This document shows positions 5,754-39,972 of a stretch of DNA of 64,000 nt, piece after piece; position 1 is the first letter of the stretch; each line of letters starts with the position of its first letter. The notes under the pieces were generated by a model, which was given only the letters and a program-made list of their open reading frames with translations, made no database searches and was not told where the DNA came from. The stretch is taken from IMG/VR virus record IMGVR_UViG_3300023083_000001, positions 1 to 64,000 of that record. The stretch is one strand, 5' to 3'. The translations under genes and the position numbers were made by a program.

Positions 5754-6125
5754 ATGTCTATTGCAAACGTTGTTAAAGCTACTGTTACCCTGGTGGGTAT
5801 TGCCGCGGTTGGTTACGTCGGTTACGTCGGTTACAAAGGTTACCAGAAGCACGTGGGTCCGATCATGAAGTTCCGTCAGGCGCTGACGATCATCGAAGTG
5901 AAGCTCAACAAGCTTGACCGCGCTGTCGCCGCTGAGAAGGATGCAGTGCTCAAAGCTGAAAAGCTCGAGAAGCTGAAACTCTTCCAAGCCAAGCTGATCG
6001 AAGTGCAGAATGTTTGGTCCGATATCGTGGGCCGTTACGCCAGTGATGAACTCACTCATGAACAGTGGGTGAGTGAAGTCACTCAATGGCACGCTAACGT
6101 CACCAGTACGTTTGCTGATCTGTAA
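5754..6125 (+). CDS. membrane-anchored coiled-coil protein
   Basis: GGAGG RBS; N-terminal TM segment with GYVGYVGYKGY followed by a coiled coil. Confidence 0.7.
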   Translation: MSIANVVKATVTLVGIAAVGYVGYVGYKGYQKHVGPIMKFRQALTIIEVKLNKLDRAVAAEKDAVLKAEKLEKLKLFQAKLIEVQNVWSDIVGRYASDELTHEQWVSEVTQWHANVTSTFADL

Positions 6126-6154: not shown

Positions 6155-6283
6155 ATGAACCGCAAGTCTATCAAAATGCTGTTGGCTGGTTTGATCATCG
6201 GCGGTGTCTTGAACTCCGGTCTGTTTGATGAAGCCGGTCAAGCCCGTGATGCGAAAGTTGCCTGGATCGCATCCTCCAAGTAA
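6155..6283 (+). CDS. small single-TM protein (42 aa, not in ORF track)
   Basis: Same CGACCGTGGAGGTCATTGATG initiation cassette as the 5754 gene; MNRKSIKMLLAGLIIGGVLNSGLF... Confidence 0.65.
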   Translation: MNRKSIKMLLAGLIIGGVLNSGLFDEAGQARDAKVAWIASSK

Positions 6284-32800: not shown

Positions 32801-33161
32801 ACGGACATCCTTGAGTTCTGTAATCTACATACTATTCAGAATTCAAGTATATCTACCCACCTGCAAGTCTCCTTGCAGAACAGACTACATCATCACCGAC
32901 TCCTGTCGGTGCTACGCGCTTCCCACCACTTGGCGGTACTCTACTCATCACCTATGTCATCATCCATGTAGGTGCTTTCGATAGTCGTTGAACCCGATTC
33001 GTGATACGTTAGACGTACTTTAGAACCTCGGCTGCTGATTGTCCTGTAATGATAGATTTTCAAGCATTCACGCTCACCGTTTCCAGTCACGTTGTAGCTC
33101 TATCACCTTTAGGAGTTTCCAGCAATTCGCGTAGTTTATTAACGTAACCTCATTGATGTTT
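32302..33161 (-). mobile_element. group I intron (IA2-like), 860 nt, in nrdJ
   Basis: P1 GUAACCUU/GAGGUUAC with U-G at the splice site; P AAUUGCUGGAA, Q AAUCAGCAG, R UUCAACGACUA, S GAUGUAGUC; P3 CUACGCG/CGCGUAG; terminal G; removal restores FCNL|TETN in frame. Confidence 0.93.
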
Positions 33162-34220
33162 AAGGTTACAGAATTGAAAGCCTGAACGACCGTCTTCGGT
33201 GTAAGCCCGCAGACCGATCTCGACACACGGGTTGTAACCCTGCTCGCTGTCTTCTGCGAAGATGAAGCCAGGCTCGCCGAATTCACGAACGGACTTCATG
33301 ATGGTTGCCCACTCAGAACGACCCAGCTCACTGCGGATCAGCAGTGCAGAGTTGTTAGAACGACCACGTTGCGGGTTGGTGGTGTACCAATCGCCTGTCT
33401 TGGCGGTGAGCATTTCTTTGTCATCTTTGGAGAAGATGCAGATCGTTGCAGCGCGCCGTATACCGCCTGACAGAACAGCGTCAGCCATGTGCATGACGAA
33501 GTCGTACGCGTGGATCGGTTTGAGCTGCAATTCAAGGTCTGGGTGTGCGATGCCATCAAGTAGTTCGCGACACTTCTCCAGAGAGCGTTGCAGGCCGTCA
33601 GGACCCGGTGCTTTAAAGCCGCCGGAGATCAATGCGCCGCGTGGACGGACTTCGGAGTAATCGAAGTGCACCTGAGTGTTCTTGTACTCAGGGAACGTAC
33701 CGCCGTCAACGAAGTAGCTGGATAGCAGAACGCCGAATGCGTCAGACCAACCTTCAATGCTGTCCGGCACGACGAAGACTTTGGCTTTGTCTTTACCAGG
33801 TGCAGTGACTTTCGGCAACTTGGCGATGTGGTGCTTTTGTACGGAGAACCCAACACCGCAGCCTGCCAGCAACAGATACATGGCGTGTTGGAAGAACTCG
33901 GTACGGTCGCAGTAGCTGAACGAGCAGTTGTACATACGCGCTTCGTGCTGGAAGATCTGAGGACCACCAAACTGCAAAGCACGCTGGGAGCCAAGTACGG
34001 CTTTATCTTTGTAAGCCAATTCAGCGAAGGCAATTGCCTCTTCCAACTCAGGTGACATTACCGCTGCATACTTCTCGCGGTGCATGTCCATCACACGCTC
34101 TACCGCCTCATCCCACGTCTCATACCGCCCAAGCTTCTCGGAGAACCGAGAATAACCCATGAAAAACTTGGAATCAGCCAACATGTCTTTGGCTAGGCTA
34201 GGTTGGAAGTTAGAATTCAT
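33162..34220 (-). CDS. nrdJ: class II ribonucleotide reductase, exon 1
   Basis: GGAG RBS before ATG 34220; YSR...ETWDEAVERV, MYNCS, GCGVGFS, GGIRRAA, GEPG, NPCVEI (thiyl Cys), FCNL. Confidence 0.9.
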
Positions 34221-35042: not shown

Positions 35043-35787
35043 TACGTATAAAAAGGAATTGCCATGGCAACTCGTAAAGGAAGTGTACTCCTCACCGTAG
35101 ATACGCAAGACAAAGCCGACGCCCTGGCTAAGTACTTCAAGGAGGAGTTTGTTGACATCGGTCCAATGTTAGCGCCTGGAAGTCGTACCCGTAAAGCTCA
35201 GCTAAACGAGGTAGCGTCAGGTATCTTGCACGGCCGTACCAAATTCGCCTATCTGGTCAAACCTAAAGATGAAAATGAAACCGGCAGAGACTGGTGGTTG
35301 ACCAAACACATCCAGTCAATTTACCCGCTTTACCACCAGTACGATAAAGTCGTTGTGATGTCAGACAAGACGTTGGTGTTCGAAAACCGTCAGATCGGCA
35401 CACGTTGCGCAACCCTGCTCAAGCTGGCTCAACAACTATGCGATGTAAACGCTCCAGACTTTTATCTGGAGATCTGCTGAGTAAGGTCTACTAGGAGGCC
35501 GGTCGATGTCCCTCTACAAATGTTTCGATACCGATCGCAACGGTAACTTCTATCTACTGACGGTCTCCATCAGCTATGACAAGAAAGGCACTCGTTCCGA
35601 TACCGTACAGCGAGTGGTACATCTGGGACGACACGCTAACCAGGACTACACCACCATCATCCGGGAACATGCGCCCGGTCTGACCAACGTGATGCTCTTC
35701 GCTGAAGCGCGTGAGTTGCCTGAGTCCGTCTTGGTTCAGTAACTTATTACACAGCCCACCAGTCTTATACGAGAAGAGGATTCCCGA

Positions 35788-36177
35788 ATGACTGATAAGA
35801 ACATCGAAGTAGGCAGTGTTGTCTACCTCAAGAGTGGTTCTCCTGGTTTGACTGTATTGGCCATTTCCGGTGATAGAGGCGGGCAATACCAAGATAAAGA
35901 TGGCGAACGGGTGCGTGGGTTGATGCCTAACCACGTACGAGTCACTTGGGAAGGTCCTCAGGGACTGGCTGAGTTCGAGAACTTCCCCACTGCTTGCGTA
36001 TCCTTGACCAAACCCGTCTGCCCTGACAGTGAAGCAACACTGGCTCGTATCAGGGAACTGCGTGAAATGGTTGCCAACATTCCAAAACGTGAAGTGCCGA
36101 TCAGTGGTCAGCGCCATTGGTACGTACAGCGCGGTGAAGTGCTCGATTGCTTCGATGAAGCCTTGGGTACTTTGTAA
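35788..36177 (+). CDS. DUF2158/YodC-like SH3-fold protein
   Basis: IEVGSVVYLKSGSPGLTV...VTW...FP..CV. Confidence 0.6.
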   Translation: MTDKNIEVGSVVYLKSGSPGLTVLAISGDRGGQYQDKDGERVRGLMPNHVRVTWEGPQGLAEFENFPTACVSLTKPVCPDSEATLARIRELREMVANIPKREVPISGQRHWYVQRGEVLDCFDEALGTL

Positions 36178-36184
36178 AGCGTTC

Positions 36185-36324
36185 GAAGCAGCACGGTGTG
36201 CCAGAGACGGTTGAATGGTGAATAGATGGAGTAACGTCCATTACAGAGCTACAGTGAAGACAGTGTCCGCCTGGGACTATACTGAATCTAACCGTGGGTT
36301 CGAATCCCATCGCCGTGTTGCTTC
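36185..36324 (+). ncRNA. tRNA-like RNA 1 (anticodon arm replaced by ~70-nt domain)
   Basis: 14-bp terminal stem GAAGCAGCACGGTG/CGCCGTGTTGCTTC; class-II-type D arm TG-CCA-GAGACGGTTGAA-TGG; T arm GTGGG-TTCGAAT-CCCAT. Confidence 0.75.
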
Positions 36325-36328
36325 AAAC

Positions 36329-36574
36329 CTCGTTCGCCAGCAGATAAGTCTGGCAAACATTGAGTGTGATGTGCCTAAACTACCCAGGCGCCGGACTGTA
36401 CGTCACCTCTCTTATCGATCCCTACGACCATACCCAGTGAGTCTATTTACTGAATTGCGAGGGAAGTCCACAGCCGCCGCACCCCGATAGGATGTAACCA
36501 CTGGAATAGACTCTGGAGGTTACCGCCCGATACTGACCTGAAAGCGTAAGAAGGTCCGGTTGGTCACGAACGAG
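36329..36574 (+). ncRNA. ~250-nt structured RNA with kissing loops and pseudoknot
   Basis: Closing stem CTCGTTCG/CGAACGAG; complementary hairpin loops GTCTAT and ATAGAC; CCGGACT/GGTCCGG long-range pair; followed by a UUCG hairpin. Confidence 0.65.
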
Positions 36575-36588
36575 ATACCCGTGGCACG

Positions 36589-36610
36589 TTACCTCCCTTC
36601 GGGGAGGTAG
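36589..36610 (+). terminator. UUCG-capped hairpin (terminator or processing/stabilising stem)
   Basis: TTACCTCCC-TTCG-GGGAGGTAG. Confidence 0.6.
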
Positions 36611-36622
36611 CACTTATTATAT

Positions 36623-36726
36623 ACCGAATGCGCTCGAAAGAGCCAGCCAGTAAGGGTGGGTCAGTTCCGCCTCGCTGACCGAGGGTAGGTGCGAAAGGAG
36701 TGGGGTTCAATTCCCCATGATTCAGT
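36623..36726 (+). ncRNA. tRNA-like RNA 2 (degenerate acceptor stem)
   Basis: T arm TGGGG-TTCAATT-CCCCA; GCTC-GAAA-GAGC in D position; GGTCAG/CTGACC internal stem. Confidence 0.5.
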
Positions 36727-36827
36727 CTTAGGGACAATAATCCTTAAGTAACTCTGGTGAGACAAATGGTCCGGGCGACACGCCCGTTAAACGCACCGGC
36801 GGAATCCGGTCGAAGTGTAAAGTTTCT

Positions 36828-36912
36828 GGAGAGGTTCCCGAGCGGTCAAAGGGGGCAGACTGTAAATCTGCTGTCGCGTACTTCGAAGGTTCGAATCCTT
36901 CTCTCTCCACCA
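36828..36912 (+). tRNA. tRNA-Tyr (GTA)
   Basis: GGAGAGG/TCTCTCC acceptor, GCAGA-CTGTAAA-TCTGC anticodon arm, long V arm, GAAGG-TTCGAAT-CCTTC, encoded ACCA. Confidence 0.97.
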
Positions 36913-37015
36913 ATTACGATCCTTTGTAACTGCACGCGACTTGCCATTGAGCGAACGTCATTCGGGCAGAAGCATTAACTTGGCGCTGTTGGCGCTGGGA
37001 GGGTCACCTTTACTC

Positions 37016-37101
37016 GGATCGATAGGGAAGTGGCTTAACCCAACGGCCTGCAAAGCCGTCTTCGAAAGATACCGTCAGTTCAAATCTGACTCGATCCTCC
37101 A
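37016..37101 (+). tRNA. tRNA-Cys (GCA) with long variable region
   Basis: GGATCGA/TCGATCC acceptor, U73, CCA; ACGGC-CTGCAAA-GCCGT; GTCAG-TTCAAAT-CTGAC. Confidence 0.92.
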
Positions 37102-37115
37102 ATTTAGGAATCGGC

Positions 37116-37268
37116 ATGGTTACTGTAATGAAGCTGGATCTCAGTAAAGTCAATTCGGTTCCGCCTGAGTTTCATCTGGAAAAGATCCGTCAATTCCAGG
37201 AAGCTCAAACCAAGCTTGAACAGGTCTGCAAAGAGAAAGGTATTCCTGTACCGATCATGGTCTGTTAA
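37116..37268 (+). CDS. small hypothetical protein (50 aa) inside the RNA cluster
   Basis: AGGA RBS; MVTVMKLDLSKVNSVPPEFHLEKIRQFQEAQTKLEQVCKEKGIPVPIMVC. Confidence 0.6.
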   Translation: MVTVMKLDLSKVNSVPPEFHLEKIRQFQEAQTKLEQVCKEKGIPVPIMVC

Positions 37269-37278
37269 TAGTTTCAAT

Positions 37279-37406
37279 CCCTCGGTCCGCAGTTGGGCGG
37301 GGTCACTGTAAGGCGATACGATACGGGAAGAGGTCGAACAAGTTTTGATAGGTCGTTCGTCCGTCGCTGGAAGTTACCGGGAGTTCGACACTTCCACTTA
37401 GGGCCA
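37279..37406 (+). ncRNA. tRNA-like RNA 3 with encoded CCA
   Basis: CCTCGGT/ACTTAGG acceptor + G + CCA; CCGC-AGTTGG-GCGG D-like arm; GGGAG-TTCGACA-CTTCC T arm; ~78-nt insert closed by GGTCACT/AGTTACC. Confidence 0.7.
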
Positions 37407-37410
37407 AACA

Positions 37411-37444
37411 ACATAGACGCCCGGCCTAGTGCCGGGCTTTATGC
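37411..37444. repeat. dispersed CATA-GC hairpin-TATG element
   Basis: ACATAGACGCCCGGCCTAGTGCCGGGCTTTATGC. Confidence 0.85.
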
Positions 37445-37452
37445 TGCTAATG

Positions 37453-37480
37453 TTTTAAAGCAATACATTACAGTGGTGAG
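37453..37480 (+). promoter_or_regulatory. putative phage early promoter
   Basis: TTTTAAAGCAA-TACATTAC-N5-TGAG. Confidence 0.7.
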
Positions 37481-37504
37481 TCCATCTATCACACAGGTGT
37501 CTAA

Positions 37505-37852
37505 ATGAAAGCATTAGTAGTCGCAGTCCTGTTATTGATCTCAGGTTACGTTCACGCTGAAACCGAGAAGATCATGAAGTACACTAACAAAGATTGTGAA
37601 CGCCTACGTTCCAATCTTCAAATCATCGCGGACAAGCAACAGAAGGGCGTTGACTTCAACGTCGCCATTGCAAGCCTGTACCGACCTTCAGTCTTAAGTG
37701 ACTTTACCTACAGGGCGTCTCTGTGGATGCTGGTCTTTTCCTCTAACAAGTTTTACGAAGTCCCTAACATGGATCAGAGTATGTATATTGGTAAAATATA
37801 CACTACGTGTATGGGAAAAGTCGGAACCGGTTATTGGACCTATTACGAATAA
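37505..37852 (+). CDS. secreted two-cysteine protein, paralog A
   Basis: Signal peptide (VHA|E); T..DC ... G V ... YR..L ... Y.TCM. Confidence 0.7.
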   Translation: MKALVVAVLLLISGYVHAETEKIMKYTNKDCERLRSNLQIIADKQQKGVDFNVAIASLYRPSVLSDFTYRASLWMLVFSSNKFYEVPNMDQSMYIGKIYTTCMGKVGTGYWTYYE

Positions 37853-39972
37853 AGGGGTTTGTAGCAATGCTTAATCATTTCAAAGGGCTGACGTTCGAGA
37901 ACAAATACTTCGCTATGCGCCCGTTGCTTGTCCATGCAATTCATGCGCTGTCTGACTTACCGCTGTTGTCGTTTACGTTGATAGACGATACGGGAGATTC
38001 ATCTAAGGTCTACTACGACCTGGATTTCATAGATTACAATCCAGAGCACCACGTTCCCAGTCACCTGGCGCACTCCCTTGCCAACAGGGTCTGTAGCGCT
38101 ATGATGCAAGAGGGTGTTCGCTTCGATGGTGAAGAGGAACGTTGGCACGGTAGTCCTGGCGACTATTTGGCGTCGGTGATCAGGGGAACAATCAACCGTA
38201 AGTATCCTAACGGCAGCTCAGTCATCCGCGAGGACATCATGACTGTCAGACTGCCGCAAGGGGCCGTGCTCCTTGTACTCGACAAAGACCACGAACGGTT
38301 GGACAGTACCAAACCACACAACCGTGAAGACCTTCTTCACACACTCATGCTTGGGAAGGTCAACTTCTTCGGTATTGACAAGGTCTGGATGTTTCACCAA
38401 CCACATGTGAAGTTCACGGAAATCAGCATTCCGTCACCGAACATCCTGTTGAACGAGATCATCGATATTGTCTTCCAAACATTCCCCTTCCTTAAAGGAC
38501 ATGTGGTGTTTGGTCCTGAGATCAGTTACATCACTGACAAGCCTTAAGGAGCTGTAGTCGATGGAAATCAATAACGATGTAAACGCAGTCATCATCGATT
38601 TGAAGCTGTACAACGAACTGCTGCGAATGGCAGACTTCGCTATCAGTGAAGTACGGTCTAACGAAACAATCGTAAGGCGTATCAACAAACATGTCTGTCG
38701 TTTTAACCCGTACATTGCCGAGGCTCAGAAGGTAGGCCGGGAAGTGATCGCATTGTCGACAAAGACCATGCGCGATAAGTTGAAGAGCTTATACAGAACC
38801 GGCGGTAAGCAGGTCTACTACCGCGAAGATAAAGACGTGTACTGGCCTGTCACGCTGGGTAAACAAATGAAGTACGATTGGACGATGGTGCGGATGAAGT
38901 CCGCTACTGAACATCGTAAGTTCTCGTCGTACGAAATCTGGCAGCATCTGAATAGCTTTGTGGTCGAGGGTGACGTTCGACTGTGTCCTAACCCAAACGT
39001 TCCTGGTTCGTTCATGAGAGCCTTGACCGAAGCTGAACGTAACGCTGAGTGGGAAAGGAACCAACCACCTGTTGTCAAAAAATCAAAACCTTACAACTTG
39101 AAAGTTATCATCACCGGCGATTCACTTACGGTGCATAAAGAAAGATCTGACGGTGAGGTGGTCGTAGAGCCTGACGATCAAGAAGAACCGAAACTGTATC
39201 TTGCGAAAATCAGATCGTTAATGAACGATTGTGTGGACGAACACCTCATTGCAGATCTTTATCGGATTGCCGATGATACCTTCGGCGGTGATCGCTACTT
39301 CGGCCAATTGCTTGTGGAGCAAAAGTGATGTTTCCGTTAAAGGACATGGTTCCAAAGAAGTACAGTCCGGTGATCGTTTACTTCAACGCCAGTTCGGTGG
39401 AAGAACTTGAAGCACAGCGTACCGCAGTACATGAGTCGATGGTTGCTAACGGTTATCACTTGCAAGCGTTCTCAAGTCATAGTTCTGTTAGTGTGGAGGT
39501 TGCATATCTCTCTACACCGATGAAGCAGTTGGCTGATGCAGAGTTCTTGCATTCAGATCGCAATTCGGCAGGACATCTTTTCCATGACAAGAAAACATTG
39601 GAACTTCCGCTCGACCACGGATTGAATGGTACCTGGCCGTTTTCTGAGGCTGATACCAATGACCTTGATCATAATTCGATGGTCGTATCCCGCTCCAATG
39701 GTGAGGTGTTGGTATATTGGAAAGAGTGGCGACTCACTCACATGCAAGCTAGACTGATAACTATCAGTCTAGCTGAGAAGGAATTTCCAATGGTCCGTAT
39801 TGTCATCGATGCGGAAGGGAAGTTTCGAATTGACCTCGATCAGTCCTTCCCTAAAGGACTGAAACTAACTGTTACTTACTAGCTAAGTGCCATTATGTGC
39901 CGAGGATATGATAGGACCCGGAGCACACCCCCTAATTCCAGCTACATCCCACGAATGAAAGGATATCGAGTC

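What the first reader, a model, noticed from the sequence alone, without database searches (positions are those of the whole stretch)
37279..37406. tRNA mimic 3 with encoded CCA end and ~78-nt anticodon-arm replacement
Seen: canonical 3' geometry (T arm GGGAG-TTCGACA-CTTCC, 7-nt acceptor strand ACTTAGG, discriminator G, CCA); 5' strand CCTCGGT; D-like hairpin CCGC-AGTTGG-GCGG. The central domain is closed by GGTCACT/AGTTACC and contains nested GGCG/CGCT, ACGG/CCGT and CGAAC/GTTCG helices. Same design as mimic 1 but with no evident sequence similarity. Inference: the tRNA scaffold is being used to display different RNA domains.
Basis: partly seen in the sequence, partly recalled or inferred. 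Interest (0 to 1): 0.75.

Follow-up and report, generated by a model that had tools for sequence, protein, structure and literature searches.

The report
Conserved tRNA-shaped phage small RNA
An uncultured 258-kb phage and its few known relatives carry, at the end of their tRNA gene cluster, a strongly conserved non-coding RNA gene that has the acceptor end, T arm, D arm and CCA tail of a tRNA. A 78-base rod stands where the anticodon arm should be, much like the still-unexplained "species 1" RNA of phage T4.

Summary
The composite (T arm, 7-nt acceptor pairing, discriminator, encoded CCA, flush D hairpin) occurs three times in the 258-kb genome: twice in the two real tRNAs and once here, against 0.2 per shuffled genome.

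I found five distinct homologues on Logan/ENA contigs of related phages, plus partial ones in two read sets. The RNA is 88-92% identical among them, while the adjacent gene is 56-63% identical as DNA and 37-54% as protein.

- In one run, homology starts exactly at 37280.
- In one relative, a 124-nt insertion sits exactly after CCA.
- All homologues fold into the same four-way junction. Variation falls in loops or keeps pairs, with two double compensatory changes.
- The only ORF across the element is broken in relatives.

It is not a tRNA. Rfam and ARAGORN reject it, even after in-silico "splicing", and it lacks the junction linkers and a variable loop.

Best reading: a stable tRNA-like RNA matured like a tRNA, with the rod as its working part. 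What the rod does is unknown. Covariation is not statistically significant and no expression data exist. The closest analogue is T4 RNA C, which shows no homology. The idea of one scaffold displaying many domains is only partly supported.

The parts
37279..37279 (+). C at position -1. It can pair with G37403 and extend the acceptor stem to 8 bp. Whether it belongs to the mature RNA is open.
   Evidence: Conserved in 5 of 5 full homologues. It is replaced in run X3, where homology starts at 37280.
37280..37286 (+). 5' strand of the acceptor stem (CCTCGGT)
   Evidence: Pairs with 37396-37402. Invariant in all homologues. RNAalifold pairs columns 2-8 with 119-125.
37287..37300 (+). D-like hairpin: a 4-bp stem and a 6-nt loop AGNNGG. 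It is flush with the acceptor stem, with no nucleotides 8/9.
   Evidence: The stem is invariant. Only the two middle loop bases vary, and the GG is kept.
37301..37378 (+). 78-nt irregular rod that replaces the anticodon arm. It has a 7-bp closing helix, a conserved internal loop GUAA/GGA (37308-37311 opposite 37369-37371), further helices and a 5-nt apical loop.
   Evidence: Same fold in every homologue. Compensatory A-U to G-C change at 37305/37374 and repair of the C.U mismatch at 37304.
37379..37395 (+). T arm: 5-bp stem and T loop TTCGA+NN (7 nt here, 8 nt in four relatives)
   Evidence: In run X3 the pair 37383/37391 changes from G-C to A-U and 37381/37393 from G.U to G-C.
37396..37406 (+). 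3' acceptor strand ACTTAGG, discriminator G and encoded CCA
   Evidence: In relative L007 a 124-nt insertion lies exactly after the CCA.
37407..37442 (+). Conserved 12-nt trailer AACAACATAGAC, then an intrinsic-terminator hairpin (37419-37437) and a T run
   Evidence: Terminator scan. Trailer and stem are conserved and the loop varies in all relatives.
36828..37101 (+). Context: tRNA-Tyr(GTA) at 36828-36912 and a class II tRNA(GCA) at 37016-37101. Both have an encoded CCA, lie on the same strand and are upstream.
   Evidence: ARAGORN and Rfam

Best explanation
37280-37406 is a gene for a small, stable, tRNA-like non-coding RNA. It is the last gene of the phage's tRNA/RNA operon.

Inferred mechanism:
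1. It is transcribed by read-through from the cluster up to the terminator at 37419-37442.
2. Its acceptor stem, T arm and D loop form a tRNA-like elbow and acceptor end.
3. The host's tRNA maturation enzymes therefore accept it. RNase P cuts at 37279/37280. The trailer with the terminator is removed by endonuclease and 3' exonucleases, which stop at the encoded CCA.
4. The result is a nuclease-resistant RNA of about 127 nt.
5. The 78-nt rod, with its invariant internal loops, is the working part. It most probably binds a protein, as a decoy or sponge for a host tRNA- or rRNA-binding factor. Decoding is unlikely.

Shown: a discrete gene, non-coding, a conserved tRNA-shaped fold, module borders at the two predicted mature ends, and placement in a tRNA operon.
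Inferred: processing, stability, trans action and the partner.
For: 1. Conservation. Five distinct homologues (L006, L007, L008=L014, L015) are 88-92% identical to the element. The adjacent gene is 56-63% identical as DNA and 37-54% as protein, and tRNA-Tyr is 84% identical.
2. Borders.
- In run X3 a 2.6-kb contig matches only 37280-37427, and the match starts exactly at the first acceptor base.
- In L007 the element follows a tRNA 3' end (...CCTCCA) after 8 nt.
- L007 also carries a 124-nt insertion exactly after CCA.
- The upstream ORFs differ between relatives.
3. Fold. RNAfold on each homologue and RNAalifold give the same four-way junction. The variable columns are D-loop, T-loop and internal-loop positions. 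Of 9 variable pairs, 8 stay paired or become paired. There is one double compensation in the alignment (27-96) and another in X3's T stem.
4. tRNA signatures are kept: TTCGA in the T loop, GG in the D loop and an encoded CCA, as in the phage's real tRNAs.
5. Non-coding. The one frame that is open here carries stops in L006 and L014, and the T loop has a 1-nt indel.
6. Relative L014 has no canonical tRNA in its cluster yet keeps this RNA.
7. Precedent. T4 RNA C also has a T arm and an acceptor-like stem around long hairpins. It is the last gene of the T4 tRNA operon, it accumulates as a stable RNA, and its role is unknown (PMC3014915, PMC9697503).
Against: - There is no RNA-level evidence. No RNA run holding the sequence could be found.
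- Covariation is not statistically significant: there are 5 sequences at 95% mean column identity, and 106 of 500 shuffles reach the observed score.
- MFE z-scores are unremarkable.
- The high identity could partly reflect recent exchange of the cassette rather than selection, because X3 carries it in another context.
- The junction has no linker nucleotides (8, 9, 26, 44-48), so an L-shaped tertiary fold is not assured.
- The T loop is 8 nt in four relatives.
- No partner was identified. The longest antisense match in the genome is 13 nt, which is chance level. The conserved downstream protein has no recognisable fold.
Confidence: 0.6

Rival explanations
1. It is an intron-containing tRNA-Tyr gene. 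CUGUAA at 37306-37311 would be the anticodon loop C32-A37, and about 61 nt (37312-37372) would be an intron at the canonical 37/38 site, removed to give a decoding tRNA.
For: The heptamer after a 5-bp stem reads CUGUAAG. The phage's own tRNA-Tyr reads CUGUAAA. The heptamer is invariant in all homologues.
Against: - 25 in-silico spliced versions are rejected by ARAGORN, even at 80% of its threshold.
- The Rfam tRNA model gives no hit at E<=10.
- The spliced product would have no variable loop and no nucleotides 8, 9 or 26.
- The insert is too short for a group I intron and matches no Rfam ribozyme or intron.
- The phage has no RtcB or Rnl2-type ligase. An Rnl1 search was uninformative because its control did not ring.
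- The GUAA/GGA internal loop can equally be read as a sarcin-ricin/loop-E-like motif (xGUA opposite GAA). That reading is inference only.
Confidence: 0.05
2. It is a cis-acting 3' element of the upstream transcript, a processing or stabilising structure for the operon or the small ORF at 37116-37268. On this reading it is not a trans-acting RNA.
For: It lies between an ORF stop and a terminator. No promoter of its own is conserved upstream.
Against: - The upstream neighbour differs in every lineage: unrelated ORFs of 50, 67 or 77 aa, a tRNA directly in L007, and unrelated DNA in X3.
- In L007 another 124-nt module separates it from the terminator.
- Nearly every base is conserved, loops included, which is more than a stabilising hairpin would need.
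Confidence: 0.15
3. It is an aminoacylated tRNA-like RNA that enters translation or a tRNA-dependent pathway, in the manner of tmRNA or a viral TLS.
For: It has an encoded CCA, a paired acceptor stem, a T loop and a D-loop GG.
Against: - ARAGORN finds no tmRNA and no tag frame.
- There is no G3:U70. Pair 3-70 is U-A or U.G.
- C1:G72 with G73 fits no bacterial identity set that I know. This rests on established identity rules, not on a test here.
- There is a conserved C.U mismatch in the acceptor stem.
Confidence: 0.1
4. It is a decaying tRNA pseudogene or a chance resemblance, with no function.
For: It fails all tRNA detectors. The MFE z-score is about -0.4.
Against: - It is 88-92% identical across phages whose neighbouring genes are 56-63% identical.
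- Substitutions avoid or preserve the helices.
- The module borders are sharp.
- It is kept in L014, where the canonical tRNAs are gone.
Confidence: 0.05
5. It is part of a protein-coding gene (ORF 37293-37508 on the + strand, or 37274-37414 on the - strand).
For: Both ORFs are listed mechanically.
Against: The + frame has in-frame stops in L006 and L014. There is a 1-nt indel in the T loop. L007 has a 124-nt insertion.
Confidence: 0.01

Closest known systems
Phage T4 RNA C (species 1 RNA, rnaC) and RNA D
   Same: A small stable RNA encoded as the last gene of a phage tRNA operon. It has a canonical T arm (CCGGG-TTCGAAT-CCCGG) and an acceptor-like terminal stem enclosing long non-tRNA hairpins. 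Its function has stayed unknown for decades (PMC3014915, PMC9697503).
   Different: - No sequence or covariance-model similarity: model R1 finds nothing in the T4 locus.
- T4 RNA C has two hairpins and no D-arm/rod four-way junction.
- Its CCA is not encoded.
- Its fold is very stable (z = -4.6), unlike the fold here.
Engineered 'tRNA scaffold' for recombinant RNA (Ponchon and Dardel)
   Same: The anticodon arm of a tRNA is replaced by an arbitrary structured RNA. The tRNA body makes the chimera a substrate for tRNA maturation and protects it from nucleases (PMC3753655, PMC3401473).
   Different: That is a human design built on a real tRNA body with normal linkers. Here the body lacks nucleotides 8, 9, 26 and the variable loop, and it is a natural, conserved gene.
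C4 antisense repressor RNA of phages P1/P7
   Same: A phage regulatory RNA whose precursor is cut by host RNase P, because its terminal stem with a 3' CCA resembles a tRNA acceptor end. This is from my own knowledge of the literature and was not checked here.
   Different: C4 is about 77 nt, has no T/D elbow, and acts through known antisense loops. No antisense target was found here.
Bacterial and phage Y RNA-like YrlA (RF02553)
   Same: A non-coding RNA with a tRNA-like module of T arm and D arm. It is found in some phages (PMC4201824).
   Different: In YrlA the 5'/3' ends form the Ro-binding stem and the acceptor analogue is closed. Here the topology is the reverse, with a free CCA end. There is no Rfam hit on the element and no TROVE/Ro gene in the phage.
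tmRNA tRNA-like domain
   Same: An acceptor stem with CCA and a T arm, attached to a long helix that leaves the body where the anticodon arm would be.
   Different: There is no G3:U70, no tag reading frame and no pseudoknots. A true D stem is present. ARAGORN finds no tmRNA.

Membership tests
tRNA (Rfam RF00005 / ARAGORN) | Scores as a cloverleaf with the tRNA covariance model or with ARAGORN | tested here: not met
   No RF00005 hit on 37279-37406 even at E<=10. ARAGORN finds nothing, with or without introns. Only at 80% threshold does it give a spurious call, using a 5' strand inside the upstream ORF.
tRNA (Rfam RF00005 / ARAGORN) | 7-nt anticodon loop on a 5-bp stem, linkers 8/9 and 26, and a variable loop | tested here: not met
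   The four helices abut without linkers, and the arm is a 78-nt rod. In-silico spliced forms are not recognised either.
tRNA (Rfam RF00005 / ARAGORN) | T arm with T-loop TTCRA, D-loop GG, 7-bp acceptor stem, discriminator and CCA | tested here: met
   The T loop is 8 nt in four relatives and the acceptor stem has one invariant C.U mismatch.
T4 RNA C / RNA D | Sequence or profile homology to rnaC/rnaD | tested here: not met
   Model R1 finds nothing in the T4 tRNA region L016. blastn against 50,697 phage records finds only terminator-like matches.
T4 RNA C / RNA D | tRNA-like terminal module and position at the distal end of a phage tRNA operon | tested here: met
T4 RNA C / RNA D | Accumulates as a stable small RNA in infected cells | not testable with these tools
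   No RNA run holds the sequence. The phage is uncultured.
YrlA / Y RNA-like (RF02553) | Rfam model score, and a Ro60 (TROVE) partner gene | tested here: not met
   No YrlA hit on the element. PF05731 is absent from the phage genome while the controls ring.
tmRNA | tRNA-Ala-like acceptor (G3:U70) and a tag reading frame | tested here: not met
   ARAGORN -m finds none. Pair 3-70 is U-A/U.G.
tRNA interrupted by a group I intron | Group I core within the insert | tested here: not met
   The only Intron_gpI hit in the window is at 32861-33171 on the other strand. The insert is 61-78 nt.

The most novel reading that the evidence does not exclude
The RNA is a natural 'tRNA-scaffolded' effector. The tRNA-like body hijacks host tRNA maturation and stability. 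The conserved rod displays a CUGUAAG / GGA loop that looks both like a tRNA-Tyr anticodon loop and like a sarcin-ricin-type motif. It would act as a pseudo-substrate that soaks up a host defence nuclease aimed at GUN-anticodon tRNAs or at rRNA. The phage clade also carries tRNA-Tyr, Asp and Asn, which are the queuosine-family targets of such nucleases. If so, this would be a new class of RNA anti-defence decoy.
Probability: 0.12. Interest if true: 0.85.

Novelty: new variant of a known kind. Interest (0 to 1): 0.58.

Why it matters
Phage tRNA clusters are usually read only as codon-usage or anti-nuclease tRNA supplies. Here the best-conserved item in the cluster is not a tRNA. It is a tRNA-shaped RNA with a different business end, and it is kept even in a relative that has no canonical tRNA in the same cluster.

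It gives a second, independent example of the design seen in T4 RNA C, whose role has been unknown for decades. Unlike T4 RNA C, it comes with comparative data that mark its conserved loops as candidate contact sites.

If the tRNA body serves as a maturation and stability handle, this would be nature's version of the engineered tRNA scaffold. The same 1.2-kb cluster holds at least two further conserved structured RNAs with no known family, so these phages look like a rich source of new RNA biology.

Tried and rejected
None found a relative.
- blastn against INPHARED phages found only tRNA-Tyr and terminator matches.
- The search for related loci with the 115-aa downstream ORF found nothing.
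- Covariance model R1 found nothing in the whole genomes of phages D6, Holyagarpour, SA002, OBP and SXP01.
- The last protein search, with the 255-aa neighbour, gave no new contig that carries the RNA.
- YrlA/Ro, RtcB, CCA-adding enzyme, Rnl2-type ligase and TGT genes are absent from the phage. The Rnl1 search was uninformative because its control did not ring.
- The intron-containing tRNA-Tyr idea was rejected.
- An antisense target search found only chance-level matches of 13 nt or less.
- The downstream conserved protein P0001 gave a confident AF2 model (pLDDT 88) but no fold match in PDB or AFDB clusters.
- Complex prediction with the E. coli CCA-adding enzyme was not folded by the tool and is no evidence either way.
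- The idea that the neighbouring 266-nt RNA is a reduced RNase P RNA was dropped. It has no Rfam hit, and its 'AGUCC' pairs with an upstream GGACU, which is the wrong topology for P4.
- A T7/T3-like promoter string sits before the element in X3. The 9-mers tested from it (CTCACTATA, CCTCACTAT) are absent from this genome.

Full report
**What the window is**

The window is the first 64 kb of a 258,357-bp phage record with direct terminal repeats, assembled from a leaf-litter metagenome. Only a few proteins are recognisable: thymidylate synthase, an AAA ATPase, and a B12-type ribonucleotide reductase interrupted by a group I intron. There are no close relatives among 50,697 deposited phage genomes.

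**Checking the observation**

ARAGORN and Rfam find two tRNAs just upstream on the same strand. These are tRNA-Tyr(GTA) at 36828-36912 and a class II tRNA(GCA) at 37016-37101, both with an encoded CCA. Neither program finds anything on 37279-37406.

RNAfold nevertheless folds the 128 nt into a four-way junction with an acceptor stem, a D hairpin, a long rod and a T arm. The energy is no better than that of shuffled sequence (z = -0.40).

A script found 19 T-arm patterns in the whole genome on both strands. Five lie within 36294-37379 on the + strand, and only three are followed by acceptor strand, discriminator and CCA. A stricter composite that adds a flush D hairpin occurs 3 times in the genome, against 0.2 per shuffled genome.

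**Finding relatives**

Pattern scans of IMG/VR, JGI metagenomes and GTDB genomes, and blastn against phages, found no homologue. Two other routes worked.

The first route was laying public runs on 35600-38600.
- Run X3 holds a 2.6-kb contig that matches only 37280-37427, at about 90% identity.
- The match begins exactly at the first base of the proposed acceptor strand and continues through the terminator.
- X3's listed changes include 37383 G>A together with 37391 C>T, which turns a T-stem G-C pair into A-U.
- They also include 37393 T>C, which turns a G.U pair into G-C.

The second route was the downstream gene (226 aa, P0001). Its homologues P0002 and P0003 are 54% and 37% identical to it. 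Their contigs all carry the element just upstream. The copies are at L006:6760-6888, L007:15-143, L008:135-263, L014:7779-7907 and L015:1023-1151.

**What the comparison shows**

- *Conservation.* The element is 88-92% identical between lineages. The adjacent gene is 56-63% identical as DNA, and tRNA-Tyr is 84% identical.
- *Borders.* Similarity starts two or three bases before 37280 and runs through the 12-nt trailer and the terminator stem.
- *Variable neighbours.* The upstream neighbours are unrelated ORFs in three lineages. In L007 the neighbour is the 3' end of a tRNA only 8 nt away.
- *Insertion at the CCA.* L007 also has a 124-nt insertion exactly between CCA and the trailer.
- *Retention.* L014 has no canonical tRNA in its cluster but keeps the element.
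- *Non-coding.* The only frame open across the element here has stops in L006 and L014, and there is a 1-nt indel in the T loop.

It is therefore a non-coding gene whose ends coincide with the predicted mature ends.

**Structure**

RNAalifold on the five distinct sequences returns the same junction with 43 pairs, and each homologue folds the same way on its own.

The unpaired variable columns are the two middle bases of the D loop (AGNNGG), the last bases of the T loop (TTCGA+NN or NNN) and three internal-loop or apical-loop bases.

Nine pairs vary.
- Eight stay paired or become paired. For example, the C.U mismatch at 37304/37375 becomes A-U in all relatives.
- One pair, 37305/37374, changes on both sides (A-U to G-C).
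- One pair, A-U to U.U, breaks in one lineage.

With so few and such similar sequences the shuffle control is not significant (106 of 500).

TTCGA in the T loop and GG in the D loop are invariant. This fits a tRNA-type elbow, although the junction has none of the linker nucleotides of a tRNA.

**What it is not**

- *Not a tRNA.* See the membership tests.
- *Not an intron-bearing tRNA-Tyr.* The arm does contain CUGUAAG where an anticodon loop would start. However, 25 in-silico spliced forms are rejected by ARAGORN, a spliced product would lack a variable loop, and the phage has no RtcB or Rnl2-type ligase.
- *Not YrlA.* There is no model hit and no Ro gene.
- *Not tmRNA*.
- *Not related to the other 'mimics'*.

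**Most likely mechanism**

The gene lies last in a tRNA operon, in front of a conserved terminator. It keeps exactly those tRNA features that tRNA maturation enzymes read: the acceptor/T stack, the elbow and the CCA.

I infer that it is released by RNase P and 3' trimming as a stable RNA of about 127 nt. I also infer that the rod is the functional part. Nearly every base of the rod is conserved, loops included, which points to protein contacts rather than simple antisense pairing. No complementary target longer than 13 nt exists in the genome.

The partner is unknown. A decoy role for a tRNA- or rRNA-directed host factor is attractive but untested.

**Comparison with known systems**

T4 RNA C is the nearest natural analogue. 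It is the last gene of the T4 tRNA operon, it has a canonical T arm and an acceptor-like stem around long hairpins, it is a stable RNA, and its role is unknown (PMC3014915, PMC9697503). There is no detectable homology and the architecture differs.

The engineered tRNA scaffold works on the principle proposed here (PMC3753655, PMC3401473). YrlA is a tRNA mimic with the opposite topology (PMC4201824).

I class the element as a new variant of a known kind.

**Limits**

- There is no expression evidence.
- All homologues come from a narrow clade.
- The high identity may partly reflect cassette exchange.
- The complex-prediction job was not run by the tool.
- The conserved downstream protein gave no functional lead.

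Noticed in passing
window 36343-36611: A ~266-nt conserved structured RNA with no Rfam family, ending in a GC-rich hairpin. Homologues are L006:5328-5580 (92%), L014:6301-6547 (81%) and a 921-nt X3 contig (~90%, flanks unlike). RNAalifold gives 68 pairs, 9 of them with compensatory changes among only three sequences. It contains RNase-P-like strings, but the pairing topology does not fit P4.
   Followed up: partly
window 36647-36828 (includes 'mimic 2', 36657-36725): A ~180-nt RNA shared with Pseudomonas phages D6, Holyagarpour, Ebordelon and OBP, Salmonella phage SA002, Shewanella phage SXP01 and Klebsiella phage FBKp24. In the four relatives' loci examined (D6, Holyagarpour, SA002, OBP) it is intergenic or mostly unannotated; tRNA genes flank it directly in D6 and OBP and lie about 1 kb away in SA002. 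In the five-sequence alignment (own, D6, Holyagarpour, SA002, SXP01), 21 of 41 alifold pairs show compensatory changes. No Rfam family matches. The T-arm-like hairpin is not a T loop in SXP01, so this is a separate RNA family and not a tRNA mimic.
   Followed up: partly
window 37016-37101: tRNA with anticodon GCA and U73 but a long variable arm (86 nt, class II shape). This is unusual for tRNA-Cys. Phage D6 annotates a similar 84-nt tRNA-Cys next to a tRNA-Ser.
   Followed up: no
window 36192-36319 ('mimic 1'): A T arm with a 7-11-bp terminal stem and no CCA. It has no blastn homologue in the related contigs L006 and L014, so it is much less conserved than the finding.
   Followed up: partly
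L007:144-267: A 124-nt insertion exactly after the CCA of the element in one relative. Its ends pair (UUGAGUAAG...CUUACUCAA). No similar sequence occurs in any other locus or in this genome.
   Followed up: partly
L006:5678-5751, 5915-6040, 6164-6275; L014:7240-7375: The relatives' clusters hold further tRNA-like modules without CCA. One has a ~16-bp terminal stem and a T arm. Another has two T arms enclosed by a UUCCAUGG/CCAUGGAA stem and gives a weak YrlA-model hit (20 bits).
   Followed up: no
window 32861-33171 (- strand): A group I intron (Rfam 73.7 bits) lies next to ORFs with B12-dependent ribonucleotide reductase domains, so the RNR gene appears to be split by it.
   Followed up: no
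window 36913-37015: The spacer between the two tRNAs can form a hairpin (GATCCT...AGGGTC). By eye it resembles spacers after tRNA-Asn and before tRNA-Ser in L006 (ACGATCCTT...GGGAGGATCACC). blastn found no significant match.
   Followed up: partly
L019 (JGI Ga0247734_1068919): A gene of the L007-type relative is present in the same metagenome as the window's contig. A low-depth 155-nt variant contig of the element is also in run X1. Two related phages therefore appear to co-occur in the sample.
   Followed up: no
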